From the NCBI GenBank assembly GCA_046118255.1, contig JBJNIA010000006.1, positions 1 through 49,590 of the forward strand: 49,590 nucleotides of DNA, read 5' to 3'. Shown here piece after piece: positions 2,156-13,588 of the stretch (its first letter is position 1; each line of letters begins with the position of its first letter). This stretch comes from Sluysia triapertura. Taxonomy: Eukaryota. A program made the translations under genes and the position numbers. The notes beneath the pieces are model-generated. The model was not told the origin of the DNA, searched no databases, and saw nothing but the letters and a program-made list of their open reading frames with translations.

Positions 2156-3547
<1,392 letters not shown>

Positions 3548-6500
3548 GTTTAGTTAAATTGCTACCGCAGCAAATTTGTAAAAATTATTATAGTTATAAG
3601 ATTTTATCGAATTAATAATTCAAATTTAAAATTAATTGTTTATAGACTGTTTATGGATTTTTTAAATAGATTTTTAATTTATAGTTTAAAATTTAATTAT
3701 ATATAATCAAAACTACTAAATTACAATAAATTTAATAATGGGTAATTTTTGTAAATCGAACATATTTAAAAAATTTTTGCAATTAATTCAGTTAATTTAA
3801 TCAGTTCATAAAAATGATCAAATAATTTAAAAGCTGAATGTAATTATCGAAAAGTAAATTTTAACATTTTAAAATAAAACATTTCATGAATAAATTTGTT
3901 ATTCATGCTGGTTAAAATGATGCTTATATTGATCATATACTCTATTGATATGTTTGTACGTGGTACCTTAAATAACAATTAATAACAGTTAATAAAAGTA
4001 AATAAGTAACTTTAAAAAAATATTCTGATAATGTTATCAACAATATGAGACAAGTTTTTATTTCGAATCCAAGGAGTAATATTTTAAGCAACTATTAAAT
4101 TGCAATTTACTGAAATTATTACCGACCTACAAAGACTATTTTTAAAAAATTATAACATGTGTATTAGTAGTTATGAAATATTTAAATATTTCAAGATTTC
4201 CATATAAAACATTTATTTTATTATCGTTGCGCAATGATAATGTAATTAATGATAATGATAATTGTGAATCAACGAAACAAAATATCAAATGGCTAAACTA
4301 ACGATATTAGGAAGAAAACCAAAAAAATATAATAACGATAATAAATTTAAAAATTAGTATAATGAATAATATCAAAAACCTAGAAATAAAAAATTTATTG
4401 TGGTAACAATAAAATTTATGATAACTAAAATGATATAAATATATGGAAATACTTACGACAATTAAACGAAAATATAGGATATCATTAATGAATAATTCAA
4501 ATTAATAAAGATTGCAAGGGACTACAAATTCAAATAGATCATTACGTTCAGCGGATCACTTTTCTCTATTCAACTACTAATTGAAACAAAATATTTAATA
4601 CTAAACATACAAGAATCAATTCTGAATTACTATTCAAAAGTAATTTAGTTAAAATAATGTTTGTTTATTCATATTAGGTTTTTCACCATTTAAAGGTGAA
4701 TATAATCTACTCAACATAATTAACTTTTTTGACTCCAATTTAAAAAGGAGAAAAAATCTCTAAAATCTATATCATTATACTTAAATACTTGAAAGAATAA
4801 AAAATATTTAAGAAGAAGAATAATAATAATAATAATAATAATAATGTTGGGATTAGTAAAGAATAAGGGTTGATAGAAGGGTCAAAACTTAGGACNNNNN
4901 NNNNNNNNNNNNNNNNNNNNNNNNNNNNNNNNNNNNNNNNNNNNNNNNNNNNNNNNNNNNNNNNNNNNNNNNNNNNNNNNNNNNNNNNNNNNNNNCTATT
5001 TGTGCTGCGACCCCTAGGAACTAAAATAAAAAGAATAAAGTAATTTTTTTAACACCAAAAAATTAAAATATATTTATAATAACATATTAGAACTTACTCT
5101 TGTTGAAACTGTTTTTTGTCGTCCAATAAAATAAAAGAATAATTGTATTAAAAATTATTTAAAATTAGAATTCTCATATTTAAAGAATATTTGCTTATGA
5201 ATCTTCTATAACTTTGAAATTTCTCGCGATCCCAAAAAAATTTTTCAACATTATTTACTTTATAATTTTGATTATCTAACAAATGTTGCGTAGATTCTTA
5301 CATAATTTGCATGATTCACTGAAATAGAGTTTATTAAAATATAGAAATTGCGAAATGATTTGCTGACACTTAATCGGTTCACAGTTAATCGTATTTAATA
5401 ATTTTTTTATTTAATCATTTTTTAAATATAAATTTATTTGTTAGTTATTTTTTACGCTTAGTTTAAAAGGCAAACATACAATGTTACATTACAATTTTAA
5501 ATACATTAAAGAAAAACCTGACTTCATGGAGATGCAAAGTCAATTTAATTGCCGTTAGTTAGAGAGACTCAAGTTGACCGAAATATGATCGAAAATTTAG
5601 TACCCCGAGCAGTCGATCAAATGAAATTTTCTATATATGATGTTACTATAAATCCGATTAATATAATGGTACAAAATAGTTGATGCCCGTATAATACATC
5701 CCTCAATTAAACTATTGAACTATTTTTATTGTTTTGTGTTTGTATGTATTCAGTTACAATTCTTATAACGCGATAGTTATGTACTGCGTTGTACAGGGAA
5801 TCCACCACATTTGATAATGAATATTCGATTTTGAATATAATGTTTTGAAAAGCACCATTTTATAGATTTTTTATGACTAATTAAGAATTAATAAAAATTT
5901 AAGATTAAAACAAGTCTACTTGCTATTGAAAGATAATTTTTTAAAATATTCTAATTAATGCATATTAAGAAGAATTTTACTTTTTATGGAAATAATATAT
6001 AAAGTGACAAAAAAAAGATGTCTAAAATATAATTTACTTTAATACCATAATATTGTGATACAATTATTTATTGATTTTGTAAACATTCCAATCACACAGA
6101 ACTTTTGAATTAATTTGAATAACTTTTGAATAAATAATGTTAATCAATACTTCAAAAAATGTAATTCTAAGTATTTAAAGATGAATAGAAAATGCGCAAT
6201 AGTAAGCAGACAATATTTGTTAATATTTTTTGAAACATGTCATTAGAAACAGAAACAAAAACAAATTTTAATCTCTTATGTTAAACATCTAATAACACTG
6301 TTTTTGTCTGACAATATCAAATGACTTAAGAGAAGTTTATCTTCTATCCGGAATGAAATATTTTCTTATTTGTTGTTTAATATTGTTTATGAATATGCAA
6401 AAATCATTAAAAATTATAAAAAAAGTGCTTCCATAAACTTATCTAAATATTAAATACTACGATCTGATTGGATAACTAACGAATTTATCACTTTTTATTA

Positions 6501-9296: not shown

Positions 9297-9769
9297 ATTA
9301 ATTTTAATTTATATATCGTCAATGAAACAGAACAATGTAAAAATAAGTCAATTTATTTTGAATTTAGTATTATGAGAAATTTATTTTGACAAAGTACTCA
9401 CACAGAACTAAATATCACACAAATATTTGGAGTTTAGATGATACTAATTAGCATGATAAGATAAGTACATTTAATATTGAGATTTTGTCCACAAATGAAA
9501 TAATTATATAAAACAATCCTAAGTGGACTATATTATATCAAAATTATATTAAAATATGATTCGTATAGATTAATACGAAAAAAATCTATTTTAGATTTTT
9601 TTGTATGACGAAATTATGAAAATAATCTTGAATTGCATATTAGTATCATCGGAAAATATCTTTTGTCATTATTTATTCAAAAGAAACAAAAATATTCTTA
9701 TTTAGAAGAATTTTTTTGACTTATAGGATATTTTTGAATTTCGACATCATCTATACATTTTGTATGTTT

Positions 9770-11055
9770 TTAATGCATTTCATGTTCGATTTCTCCATCA
9801 CCACCTTCTTCTTCGTCATATTCTTCGTTTGTTTCAAGTGCTGCATCTTCAATTTCATTTTCTTGTTCTTCAACTTCATCAATTTCTTCTTCAACTTCTT
9901 CTGCCTCTTCATTTTCTGGTGACCGTGTTCCTGTTGTGTATCCTTCTGCATCTTCCTCATCTTTGGCTGATGCCCCTACTTCGATATAATCATTTATCAA
10001 ACTAGTCATTGAATCTCGAGCTTCATTAAATTCTCCTTCTTCCATACCTTCACCAACATACCAATGGACAAAGGTACGTTTTGAAAATAGTATATCAAAT
10101 TTCTTCAAAAGTCCTGTCCAACAACAACCAATAGCTGTTGTATTTGTTAACATCAAAACGGATCTTAATGTTTGAGCGATTTCACTACCTGGTACAGCTG
10201 TTGGTGGTTGACAATTTATACCTATTTTAAATCCTGTTGGACACCAATCAACAAATTTAATATCTGTTCGTCTTTTTATCTCAAAAACAGCAGAATTGAC
10301 TTGTTTTGGTGTTACATCTCCGCGATATTGCAAACAACACGCCATATATTTGCCACTAGCTAATTTTATAGTCACTAAGGAACTTTTATCATCAAATATA
10401 GCCCTGGTTAATTCATTAATACCTAAATATTCATGATCAGCTCGTCTAGATGAAAGCACAGGTGTGTATGCTGTTATTGGATAATGTATGCGTGGATATG
10501 GTACTAAATTTGTTGTAACTTGATCAAGATCGGCATTAAGAAAGCTTTCGAAACGTAATGATACAGTTAATGAACTAAACACCTGTGCTAATATTCTGTT
10601 TAGATTATTATAAGTTGGTCGACCGATATCTAATGTATTCACACACATATTATTAACAGCATTATTATCTGTCATGCTAGATATTTCTGCATTATCAATA
10701 GATGTTGTAATACTTAATAATGAATTGTATGGTTCTACTACAGCAGTTGCCAAATTAGCACATGGTATTATAGCATATTGAAATTTGGATCGTTTTGTGT
10801 ATTCTACTCCAGTTCTTTCAATTAAAAGCGAAGCAAAACCAGAACCAGTACCGCCACCATAACTATTTATAATAAAAAAACCTTGTAACATATCACAATT
10901 ATCAACTGCTTTTCGTAGACATTCTATCGTTGTTTCAATTAAAGTTTTACCTAAAGTGAAATGACCTCTTGCATAATTGTTTGCTGCATCTTCAGCTCCC
11001 GATATAAGCTGATCTGGGTGCCATAAATTACGGTATGCACCAGTTCTGACTTCAT
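9770..11055 (-). CDS. TUBA: Divergent alpha-tubulin, 3' exon (residues 76-503 in canonical numbering); 5' exon(s) not found
   Basis: Colinear with alpha-tubulin from DEVRTG to DYIEVG with no indels or stops; [16 protein letters not shown] and [13 protein letters not shown] retained. Acceptor ...ATAACAG|ATGAAGTC at 11056/11055 is phase 1 in codon 76; the ORF-track start MYVYIT is intronic. Confidence 0.93.
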
Positions 11056-12396
11056 CTGTTATGTAAACATACAATAAAATAAAAAGAAATAATTAAAATA
11101 CTTCATTTATAAAATAAATTCTAAACTTTTATTTAATGACTAATTTAAATACCATTAATATAATTTGAAATATAGCTGAAATATAATATTGGATTATATT
11201 TGTGACTAGATTTGGTTGGAGCCTATTTATGATTTATTTTAGTGATCTCACAATTGATCTCATAGATTGAAATGACATTCAAGAGCGTCAAATTATTTAT
11301 TTATTTATTATTTTTGTTGTTACATCAAAGTATAATTTTTATTTTATACCACAAAAAACGTATATAAACGCAACTAAATGCCACCACATTTCAATAAACA
11401 TTAAATCAACTCAATTATTTAGTAACATTCAGTATCAGTACTAGAAATTTTGGATTATTTTTGATTAATAAATTTATTAAGTTATTTCTTGTAAGTTCGC
11501 TTCGACTCTTGCAGTCAAAATATTAAAATCACACTTAAATTCTTTCTTTGGTATATTTTACCATCCCGATTTAATGAGGGGAAAATTTTGTATTTAAAAT
11601 TTAAAAATTAATAATTAAATTCCTGAAAGGGTCTGAATTATAAAATATCTATTCTATTCTTACTCCTACTCAAATTGAACAGTGTCTTATAATAAACCTT
11701 ATATTTTTGTTATTATTTTGATGTTAATTTGTTGTTAATTTCCGATATTTTAAAAAATTCATTTAGAACAAGTTGGAATAAGATTACCTCAAAATGAAAT
11801 CACAAGTACGAGACCCTCTAACTAGTATAGAATAAGAATTAAAATTTAAGTAATATGCGTTAATTCAAATTTTGATAGCAAAAACGATTGTTTTAGTTAA
11901 AGGAACTCCCAATCTACGTCATAAGTCTTTTACTGTAACCGGACCTTCCTCAATTTTATTTTGCCTTAGGTTTAGAGTTAAGAAAACCACAACGCATAAA
12001 TTTATTATTCACACATCACACAAACATACAGTAATTCACAAAATACATAAGAAAATCTCTAATTTTAATTATGTTAAATCACAATCTGATCATCTAATTC
12101 ACGTCGTAATCATACATTCGTAAATCATCAAATATTTTTTGTTTCTTTAGCAAACTATTCAATTATAATGTTCCAAACAAACAATTTCAATAAGGTTCAT
12201 TTTCAAGTCCAAACACAATGTTTCACACGATCTTTTACTTTACACTATTCAAAATCATTCTATTACTCTTATAGCTTCAAAATCTTTAAATTTGTTAGTA
12301 TTTCAAACAATTAATTTAACACATTTAATAATAATAAATTAAATTAATAATACTAATAACAATAATTACATTAGTTATACAATAATAACCTTAATC

Positions 12397-12467
<71 letters not shown>

Positions 12468-12819
12468 NNNNNNNNNNNNNNNNNNNNNNNNNNNNNNNNN
12501 NNNNNNNNNNNNNNNNNNNNNNNNNNNNNNNNNNNNNNNNNNNNNNNNNNNNNNNNNNNNNNNNNNNAATAAGCACCATCATTGGTATGCAACATATAGT
12601 AAAATAGTTGGTTGTCAGATTAAGTGATAGTAGATCACTACATATGTTTTGATTAATTGACCTTTAAAATCGACTTTGATCACTTAATCTTTGATTCCAT
12701 ACAAATACCCTAAACTCCATACGCGAAGCACTTAAACTCTAAATCCATATAAACCAAAAACTAAAAACACTATCCTTAATTTGCAACGCTAAATCCAAAT
12801 TTAATACTCTAACTAAAAG

Positions 12820-12911
12820 CCAATACAAAATATTCAACCAATGAGATCGTTCAAAACTGTTACACAACAATCATGAGTAAATCACATTTTCGAGGGGATG
12901 GTTTGGCGCGG
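12820..12911. promoter_or_regulatory. CCAAT boxes plus E2F-like site
   Basis: CCAAT at about 12820 and 12838; TTTGGCGCGG at 12902-12911. Confidence 0.25.
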
Positions 12912-13435
12912 ATATATCCACGTACTTCTAAAATGAAATTGATTTTCGTATGCTTAAATATTACATGATCTATTATTTGCCAATAAACTTCGTAAAATAT
13001 GTTAAAGAACTCTATACATAGTACAAATTTAACATAGCTAATAATAGAAACACTTAAGTTGAATTAATTAAATTATGATTTTTCGTTGTTTAACATTAAT
13101 TTTTTATTTGAATTTTGTAAATTTATTATGATCCATGACATCGTTAAATTAAGCCAAGTTATGTATAAATGTTGCATCACATTTATATTTAGTTCTTAAA
13201 GTTATCTTAAGATAATTTAGAATGTGTTGAATAATAAAAATGTGTATAATAATTAGGAAATTTGTATCAAGAAATTTAATAATTTGAATTTTACAAAACT
13301 TTGATGTTTATTATTTTCTCATTTCTCGGAATACGTGATTTAAATTGTTGAATTTCCTTTTAATTACTTGATAAAATTAAATTAAATAAAAACTAATTGA
13401 ATGTATATAATTATTATTACATTTTGCAAATTCAG

Positions 13436-13530
13436 AAAATTTAAATGTTGAATCAGATAAAAATGAAACATATCAATTTAAAGATTATACAAATGAAGCT
13501 AAAAGAATGATACGAATAGCATTACCAATG
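13436..13530 (+). CDS. MATE/SLC47-family transporter exon (N-terminal, into TM1)
   Basis: ttcag| ...KDYTNEAKRMIRIALPM |gtatga; corresponds to the SLC47A1 E.R.LL.LAGPA exon end and splices in frame (phase 0) to 15150. Confidence 0.75.
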
Positions 13531-13588
13531 GTATGATTTAATTTATCAATAAATAATAAAACACTGTTTTATTACATAAAAAGCATTT

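What the first reader, a model, noticed from the sequence alone, without database searches (positions are those of the whole stretch)
9770..9973. 67-residue hyper-acidic tubulin tail: a possible genetically encoded polyglutamylation mimic
Seen: after G436 the tail is 67 aa with 32 Asp/Glu (canonical neighbour: 15 aa, 8 acidic). It starts with a normal-looking end (DEEDAEGY), continues through a TTGTRSP linker and a Glu-rich run with an internal EEY, and ends in HEMH. Established: tail charge tunes motors, severing enzymes and MAPs, and the terminal Tyr is the substrate of the detyrosination cycle. Inference: the tail arose by stop loss or duplication, hard-wires high charge, and escapes tyrosination unless it is cleaved back to EGY or EEY.
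Basis: partly seen in the sequence, partly recalled or inferred. Interest (0 to 1): 0.7.

Follow-up and report, generated by a model that had tools for sequence, protein, structure and literature searches.

The report
Flatworm alpha-tubulin with long acidic tail
The last exon of a divergent flatworm alpha-tubulin gene really does encode a 67-residue tail of about -30 charge, and three related genes keep the same total charge, so the feature looks selected, though nothing shows that this copy is complete or expressed.

Summary
On the minus strand, 9973-9773 encode 67 residues after the canonical Gly436, 32 of them Asp/Glu, with a TAA stop at 9772-9770. An independent DNA read set matches this stretch without differences.

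The tail is not a local stop-loss accident. Three related genes (P0012, P0014, P0021; 70-74% core identity) carry 67-80-residue tails with 33 acidic residues each and net charge -29 to -31. The tail sequences barely align, so total charge appears to be what is conserved.

These four form a 100/99-supported subclade. It sits inside a 100/100 clade that includes the deposited Schmidtea polychroa and Dugesia ryukyuensis alpha-tubulins. All six have Gln at catalytic Glu254 and long C-terminal extensions.

The tail has three parts: a short canonical-like acidic patch, a Ser/Pro linker and a 48-residue polyacidic block. It ends HEMH, so it offers no terminal Tyr for the tyrosination cycle.

Two caveats remain. 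The exon starts at a conserved splice acceptor (residue 76), and no exon for residues 1-75 exists anywhere in the window. No RNA run was available. "Polyglutamylation mimic" is a reasonable analogy but untested.

Earlier notes of this scan report the same clade elsewhere in this genome (s1-477639, s1-474814, s1-463398).

The parts
9770..9772 (-). TAA stop codon of the extended tail
   Evidence: The X1 contig agrees.
9773..9916 (-). Distal polyacidic block, 48 codons, starting ENEE and ending HEMH. It contains an internal EEY and a 21-nt imperfect tandem duplication at 9866-9910.
9917..9937 (-). Neutral Thr/Ser/Pro linker TTGTRSP with an S-P site. An S-P in the same relative place is seen in P0014, P0021 and P0101.
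9938..9973 (-). Proximal acidic patch ASAKDEEDAEGY. It resembles a complete canonical alpha-tubulin tail.
9974..11059 (-). Body of the last exon, covering alpha-tubulin residues about 76-436. It has the GGGTGSG motif, Gln at position 254 and the H11-H12 motif [14 protein letters not shown].
   Evidence: Pfam PF00091 and PF03953; alignment; 55% identity to gene A
11060..11095 (-). 3' splice site: a T-rich tract followed by AG. The intron is phase 1 and lies at the same position as in the related loci L001 and L002.
9672..9677 (-). AATAAA, a candidate polyadenylation signal about 95 nt after the stop
11096..13588 (-). Upstream region with no recognisable exon for residues 1-75. It is repeat-rich (about 1500x depth at 11900-12100 in X1) and contains an (ATT)n run and a masked N run at 12467-12577.
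2156..3508 (-). Gene A, a canonical alpha-tubulin with a 15-residue tail ending EEY. Used as the comparator.
13589..14926 (-). Gene C, an alpha-tubulin with a short, weakly acidic tail ending EKFI. It lies 2.5 kb upstream of the B exon on the same strand.

Best explanation
Window 9770-11059 (minus strand) is the last exon of a divergent alpha-tubulin. It belongs to a flatworm lineage of alpha-tubulins that have Gln in place of catalytic Glu254 and long C-terminal extensions. In this subclade the extension is a gene-encoded polyanion. It has three parts: a short canonical-like acidic patch, a Ser/Pro linker, and a polyacidic block of about 50 residues. Selection seems to act on total charge (about -30) rather than on sequence. 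Inferred mechanism: once the tubulin is in the lattice, the tail projects from helix H12 as a permanent, enzyme-independent, highly charged brush. This is roughly the charge that about 22 added glutamates would give. It would change how motors, MAPs and severing enzymes read the microtubule surface, and it takes the protein out of the Tyr/detyrosination cycle. Combined with Gln254, which should block GTP hydrolysis at the next dimer, the isotype probably builds or seeds stable, specialised microtubules. Shown here: the tail is coding, conserved in charge, and clade-specific. Inferred, not shown: lattice incorporation, effects on readers, tissue of use, and whether this particular copy is intact.
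For: - The tail is in frame and coding-like: P(open by chance) = 0.0026, GC 39% against 24% in the flank, and body-like Glu codon use.
- DNA contigs from X1 agree with the assembly.
- Relatives P0012, P0014 and P0021 have tails of 80, 80 and 67 residues with 33 acidic residues each. B has 32 in 67. Net charge is -29 to -31, and such equal counts have P = 0.002 under a common acidic density.
- The ML tree gives a long-tail/Gln254 clade at 100/100 and an acid-tail subclade at 100/99.
- All six clade members have Gln254.
- The splice acceptor position and phase are conserved in B, L001 and L002.
- B shows no excess of unique changes at clade-invariant sites: 6, against 3-5 in its relatives.
- Among 271 alpha-tubulins fetched, the only long tails that are not gene fusions or read-through-like ends belong to this clade, and only this subclade is hyper-acidic.
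- Background on tails, polyglutamylation and severing or motor read-out: PMC4137062.
- E254 mutants give hydrolysis-dead, stable lattices: PMC7018511, PMC8764682.
- Non-hydrolysing tubulin raises alpha-tail accessibility: PMC12885479.
Against: - No exon for residues 1-75 (T1 loop GQAG and so on) exists anywhere in the 49.6-kb window apart from those of genes A and C.
- The upstream DNA is repeat-rich, and gene C sits only 2.5 kb upstream.
- B's terminal branch is about 2.6 times longer than those of P0012 and P0014.
- Glu207 of the universal DNEA motif is Asn in B.
- No RNA run holds the locus, so transcription, the 3' end and splicing are unverified.
- No protein or functional data exist for any clade member within reach of these tools.
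- A linear 67-residue peptide is not geometrically equivalent to branched glutamate chains.
Confidence: 0.6

Rival explanations
1. This copy is a 5'-truncated relic. A tandem or partial duplicate kept only the last exon, or lost exons 1-2 to transposon insertions. It makes no functional tubulin here, and intact paralogues elsewhere in the genome carry the function.
For: No N-terminal exon is present in the window. There are high-copy repeats directly upstream, and a 234-nt piece of the exon is itself multi-copy in X1. The terminal branch is longer. Earlier notes report other acid-tail and Gln254 alpha-tubulin genes in this genome. No RNA evidence is available.
Against: A 430-codon open frame persists in DNA that is about 25% GC. 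The acceptor is intact and conserved. B has only 6 unique changes at clade-invariant sites, like its relatives. Tail charge is kept at the clade value. Exon 2 is also absent from the 286 nt upstream in the related locus L002, so a long intron at this site is plausible.
Confidence: 0.27
2. The tail is real and expressed but does not work as a glutamylation-like code. It could be a docking or regulatory module, for example binding basic partners or being switched by phosphorylation at the linker S-P. It could act as a spacer that sets inter-microtubule distance. Or it could be an assembly brake that keeps this GTPase-dead tubulin soluble or limits it to seeds and caps.
For: The three-part layout has an S-P site conserved in 4 of 6 clade members. 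Sister lineages have long tails that are not acidic (net -12 and +4), so length or projection itself may be the ancestral function. There is co-occurrence with Gln254.
Against: Nothing discriminates this from the charge-code reading. The near-constant acidic count argues that charge matters.
Confidence: 0.1
3. Artefact: an assembly or sequencing error, or a missed intron or polyadenylation site, creates a false extension and the true protein ends near EGY.
For: The proximal 12 residues look like a complete canonical tail ending in Tyr.
Against: The X1 contig is identical over 9300-10064. There are no donor-like sites in the tail. Three related genes on independent contigs have the same kind of uninterrupted acidic extension.
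Confidence: 0.03

Closest known systems
Deposited planarian alpha-tubulins: Schmidtea polychroa Q7Z1L8 (489 aa, P0088) and Dugesia ryukyuensis A7M6D9 (534 aa, P0101)
   Same: Same clade (100/100). Both have Gln254, the FNEA/CCLQYRG/EIKRRTD signatures, and a short acidic patch followed by a long extension.
   Different: Only 59% core identity to B. Their extensions are not polyacidic: 54 residues at net -12, and 99 residues at net +4. From my memory only, the S. polychroa protein was published in 2003 as a 'divergent alpha-tubulin'. The paper is not in the searchable library.
Unnamed relatives P0012 (UniParc UPI00060D14C4), P0014 and P0021 (Logan contigs of SRR33002330)
   Same: 70-74% core identity. 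Tails of 67-80 residues with 33 acidic residues. Same patch-linker-acidic block layout. Same phase-1 intron before DEVRTG.
   Different: The tail sequences hardly align. The ends differ: ELY, EDL and DDN against HEMH. P0012 and locus L001 have the N-terminal exon, which this window lacks.
Canonical alpha-tubulin tail plus TTLL polyglutamylation and the Tyr/detyrosination cycle
   Same: Negative charge projecting from H12. The added charge of about 22 units lies in the range of long glutamate chains (background: PMC4137062).
   Different: The tail is gene-encoded, linear, constant and not reversible. It has no terminal Tyr or Phe. It is about four times longer than a canonical tail.
Engineered hydrolysis-deficient alpha-tubulin E254 mutants
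   Same: Loss of the catalytic Glu254 (PMC7018511, PMC8764682, PMC11893814). Non-hydrolysing tubulin increases alpha-tail accessibility (PMC12885479).
   Different: Here the change is natural, fixed in a clade and paired with an extended tail. Its biochemical effect has not been measured.

Membership tests
alpha-tubulin (Pfam PF00091 Tubulin + PF03953 Tubulin_C) | Both tubulin domains above Pfam cut-offs | tested here: met
   PF03953 scores 130.8 bits and PF00091 scores 114.3 bits, but only profile positions 64-189 of 190 are matched.
alpha-tubulin (Pfam PF00091 Tubulin + PF03953 Tubulin_C) | N-terminal 75 residues with the T1 loop GQAG | tested here: inconclusive
   No such exon was found in the window by tblastn or by six-frame reading. 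It may lie outside the window or be lost.
alpha-tubulin (Pfam PF00091 Tubulin + PF03953 Tubulin_C) | T4 signature GGGTGSG and the alpha-type H11-H12 motif [14 protein letters not shown] | tested here: met
   Both are invariant columns in the alignment.
alpha-tubulin (Pfam PF00091 Tubulin + PF03953 Tubulin_C) | Catalytic Glu254 in the T7/H8 region | tested here: not met
   B has NADLDQ where the canonical protein has NVDLTE, so position 254 is Gln.
Flatworm long-tail / Gln254 alpha-tubulin clade | Monophyly with Q7Z1L8 and A7M6D9, apart from canonical alpha-tubulins | tested here: met
   The clade has 100/100 support and is separated from canonical alpha-tubulins by a stem of 0.51.
Flatworm long-tail / Gln254 alpha-tubulin clade | Gln254 plus an extension of 50 or more residues beyond helix H12 | tested here: met
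Flatworm long-tail / Gln254 alpha-tubulin clade | Phase-1 intron immediately before DEVRTG | tested here: met
   Seen in B, L001 and L002. It could not be tested for the two cDNA-derived planarian entries.
Acid-tail subclade (B, P0012, P0014, P0021) | Tail with about 33 acidic residues and net charge about -30 | tested here: met
   Acidic counts are 32, 33, 33 and 33. Net charge is -29 to -31. Subclade support is 100/99.
Substrates of the tubulin tyrosination/detyrosination cycle | C-terminus ending in acidic residues followed by Tyr or Phe | tested here: not met
   B ends HEMH. Of the relatives, only P0012 ends in Tyr.
Polyglutamylated tubulin | Branched glutamate chains added by TTLL enzymes to tail Glu residues | not testable with these tools
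   This needs mass spectrometry or modification-specific antibodies.

The most novel reading that the evidence does not exclude
Flatworms carry a conserved alpha-tubulin subfamily that encodes, in the gene itself, two states that other animals reach only transiently or enzymatically. One is a hydrolysis-dead interface (Gln254). The other is a tail with the charge of heavy polyglutamylation, held at about -30. Together they would yield permanently 'GTP-like, hyper-glutamylated-like' microtubules for a specialised structure such as sperm cortical arrays or axonemes.
Probability: 0.3. Interest if true: 0.8.

Novelty: new variant of a known kind. Interest (0 to 1): 0.55.

Why it matters
Tubulin tails are normally 10-20 residues long, and their charge is tuned after translation. 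A natural isotype with a tail four to five times longer, and with total charge held constant across species, would offer two things. It would be a ready-made reagent for separating charge from branch geometry in the tubulin code. Paired with Gln254, it would also be a natural experiment on stable, non-hydrolysing lattices. If this particular copy is only a truncated relic, the point still stands for the intact relatives.

Tried and rejected
- **Upstream exon search.** I ran tblastn with the N-termini of gene A, gene C, P0012, P0088, P0101 and L001 exon 2, and also read all six frames. I found only chance-level hits. One, EEGPVTV at 11969-11931, lies in a roughly 1500x repeat and has the wrong splice phase.
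- **Shared exon with gene C.** C has no phase-1 donor at the equivalent site, so I rejected this.
- **SL trans-splicing to the acceptor.** The exon's first ATG is out of frame, so this would not yield tubulin. I rejected it by inspection.
- **RNA evidence.** The single run search returned one DNA-like run and no RNA. Laying it showed colinear genomic contigs only.
- **AlphaFold.** The model of the exon product with an 8-row alignment had mean pLDDT 35. It is uninformative, and I draw nothing from it.
- **Profile word search of the clade.** Fused tandem tubulins dominated the results, and the search added no new close orthologues. P0168 from Fasciola is a fusion with Glu254 and is not relevant.
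- **Literature.** I found no paper on long acidic tubulin tails in flatworms.
- I did not run the large representative search. At 50% clustering this clade would collapse with canonical tubulins, and the operators had asked for restraint. I did not build or search any joined (spliced) protein model; all exons were searched by reference.

Full report
**Locus.** The window is AT-rich (about 24% GC). It carries three alpha-tubulin genes in tandem on the minus strand.
- Gene A (2156-3508) is canonical. Its tail is 15 residues long and ends EEY.
- Gene B (9770-11059) is the subject of this finding.
- Gene C (13589-14926) has a short, weakly acidic tail ending EKFI.
- A and C each have a first exon that is only the ATG, followed by a 40-45-nt intron.

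**Observation.** The B reading frame runs 430 codons. After the IEVG that aligns with canonical EEVG436 there are 67 residues: 26 Glu, 6 Asp, 2 Lys/Arg and 2 His. A TAA stop follows at 9772-9770. The tail has three parts:
- a 12-residue patch that looks like a complete canonical tail and ends in Tyr (9973-9938);
- a 7-residue Thr/Ser/Pro linker (9937-9917);
- a 48-residue polyacidic block that ends HEMH (9916-9773).

Several points argue that the extension is coding and not chance.
- With the flank's base composition, an open run of 67 codons has P = 0.0026.
- The tail is 39% GC against 24% in the flank, and it uses GAA over GAG as the gene body does.
- It has no donor-like splice sites.
- An AATAAA lies about 95 nt after the stop.
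- Contigs of a public DNA run (X1) cover 9300-10064 and 10556-11490 with no differences. That run may be the sample the assembly came from.

**What the gene is.** Pfam finds both tubulin domains. B is 55% identical to gene A, but it is much closer to three unnamed proteins:
- P0012, UniParc UPI00060D14C4, 561 aa, 74% core identity;
- P0014, 73% core identity;
- P0021, 70% core identity.

P0014 and P0021 both come from Logan contigs of run SRR33002330. The next closest relatives are the deposited planarian alpha-tubulins of Schmidtea polychroa (Q7Z1L8, 489 aa) and Dugesia ryukyuensis (A7M6D9, 534 aa), each at 59%.

A maximum-likelihood tree of the common core puts these six in one clade (100/100). 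A long stem separates it from animal, fungal and plant alpha-tubulins. B, P0012, P0014 and P0021 form a subclade within it (100/99). All six have Gln where Glu254 should be. The nearest named relatives are planarians, which agrees with the earlier scan note that this genome is a flatworm. I did not identify the species.

**The tail in relatives.**

| Protein | Tail length (residues) | Acidic residues | Net charge |
|---|---|---|---|
| B | 67 | 32 | -30 |
| P0012 | 80 | 33 | -31 |
| P0014 | 80 | 33 | -31 |
| P0021 | 67 | 33 | -29 |

The tail sequences barely align, and the ends differ (HEMH, ELY, EDL, DDN). If acidic residues were scattered at one common density, counts this equal would occur with P = 0.002. 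That figure is post hoc and rests on four sequences.

The layout is shared: acidic patch, then a Lys/Ser/Pro linker, then an acidic block. An S-P site recurs in the linker of B, P0014, P0021 and the Dugesia protein. The two published planarian proteins have long tails that are not polyacidic (net -12 and +4).

So a long extension is ancestral to the clade, and the polyanion is specific to the subclade. A 21-nt imperfect tandem duplication inside the acidic block shows that slippage contributed to its growth.

I screened 271 alpha-tubulins fetched by three word searches, one of which drew its words from the tail region. Apart from gene fusions and a read-through-like protist entry, every tail longer than about 45 residues after the GEGMEEGEF motif belonged to this clade. 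Only the subclade was hyper-acidic.

**Is this copy intact?** The exon begins at a good acceptor: a T-rich tract, then AG, then AT GAA GTC. The intron is phase 1 and lies just before DEVRTG. The related loci have the same position and phase.
- In L001, exon 2 (residues 2-75) lies only 55 nt upstream, after an ATG-only first exon.
- In L002, no exon 2 is seen in the 286 nt available.

In this window I could find no exon for residues 1-75 on either strand apart from those of genes A and C. The 2.5 kb between B and C is repeat-rich, with about 1500x depth at 11900-12100 in X1. It also contains an (ATT)n run and a 111-base masked stretch, which I did not try to fill.

| For an active gene | For a truncated or relaxed copy |
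|---|---|
| Long open frame in AT-rich DNA | Missing 5' exons |
| Intact, conserved acceptor | Gene C close upstream on the same strand |
| Only 6 unique changes at clade-invariant sites, against 3-5 in relatives | Terminal branch about 2.6 times longer |
| Tail charge kept at the clade value | Glu207 of the DNEA motif replaced by Asn |

No RNA run holds the locus, so expression, the 5' exons and the 3' end remain open. I put about 60-65% on an intact gene with distant or unassembled 5' exons, and about 27% on a truncated relic.

**Mechanism.** The tail being coding and conserved in charge is shown here. The rest is inference from established tubulin biology.
- Tails project from H12 and are the sites of polyglutamylation and detyrosination. 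Their charge is read by motors and severing enzymes (PMC4137062).
- A tail of -30 adds about 22 charges over the canonical -8, which is in the range of long glutamate chains. However, it is linear, constant and irreversible.
- Ending in HEMH, it cannot enter the tyrosination cycle as it stands.
- Gln254 should prevent hydrolysis of GTP in the neighbouring dimer, as engineered E254 mutants do (PMC7018511, PMC8764682).
- Non-hydrolysing tubulin makes the alpha tail more accessible (PMC12885479).

The most likely role is therefore a specialised, stable microtubule population with a permanently charged surface. Alternative roles for the tail cannot be separated here. These include partner docking, a phospho-switch at the S-P site, a spacer between microtubules, or an assembly brake.

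**Novelty.** Long-tailed planarian alpha-tubulins have been in databases since the 2000s. From memory, the S. polychroa protein was published in 2003 as a divergent alpha-tubulin, but I could not retrieve that paper. I found no description of a polyacidic subclade with conserved charge. Other agents of this scan have reported the same clade on other pieces of this genome. I therefore rate this as a new variant of a known kind and as moderately interesting. The missing 5' exons and the lack of expression data hold the score down.

**Method notes.** I built no joined spliced model and searched none; exons were used by reference. The AlphaFold model was of too low confidence to use.

Noticed in passing
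window 10352-10585: In the X1 contigs, a 234-nt piece of the B exon that spans the Gln254 codon sits on a unitig of about 170x depth, against about 15x for the rest of the exon. It has one mismatch, and other contigs diverge after 10619. A fragment of this gene family seems to be multi-copy in the genome, either as captured or dispersed fragments or through gene conversion among paralogues.
   Followed up: partly
window 11900-12107 and 11484-11587: High-copy repeats (about 1500x and about 95x in X1) lie in the presumed intron upstream of the B exon. X1 also shows a contig joining 11096 to 11586 with 30 other letters in between, which may be a structural variant or a second haplotype.
   Followed up: no
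window 13589-14926 (gene C): This alpha-tubulin is 81% identical to gene A in the core. It has a shortened, altered loop where Lys40 normally sits, so no K40 acetylation motif. Its 12-residue tail has only 4 acidic residues and ends EKFI, with no terminal Tyr.
   Followed up: partly
window 3509-3560 and 14927-14980: In genes A and C the first exon is just the ATG, followed by introns of only 40-45 nt. Introns in this genome can therefore be tiny, which makes the missing exon 2 of gene B stand out.
   Followed up: yes
L002:1-300 against L001:1-400: In the relative sampled by SRR33002330, one acid-tail paralogue (L001) has exon 2 only 55 nt upstream of the last exon. The other (L002) has none in the 286 nt available. 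Intron length at this site varies between paralogues.
   Followed up: partly
window 9866-9910: An imperfect 21-nt (7-codon) tandem duplication of 2.1 copies at 79% match lies inside the acidic block. This is a sign of slippage-driven growth.
   Followed up: yes
proteins P0224 and P0197: These two unnamed alpha-tubulin fragments carry the clade's FNEA-type H12 signature and have 50-55-residue tails after H12 (74 and 69 residues after the GEGMEEGEF motif) of mixed composition. They are probably further members of the long-tail clade.
   Followed up: no
window 12467-12577 and other N runs (about 20800-21990, 25400-25500, 27040-27340, 31580-31840, 35900-36450): The masked or gap stretches all abut simple-sequence repeats, such as (ATT)n and runs that translate as poly-Thr, poly-Val or poly-Tyr. 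I left them untouched.
   Followed up: no
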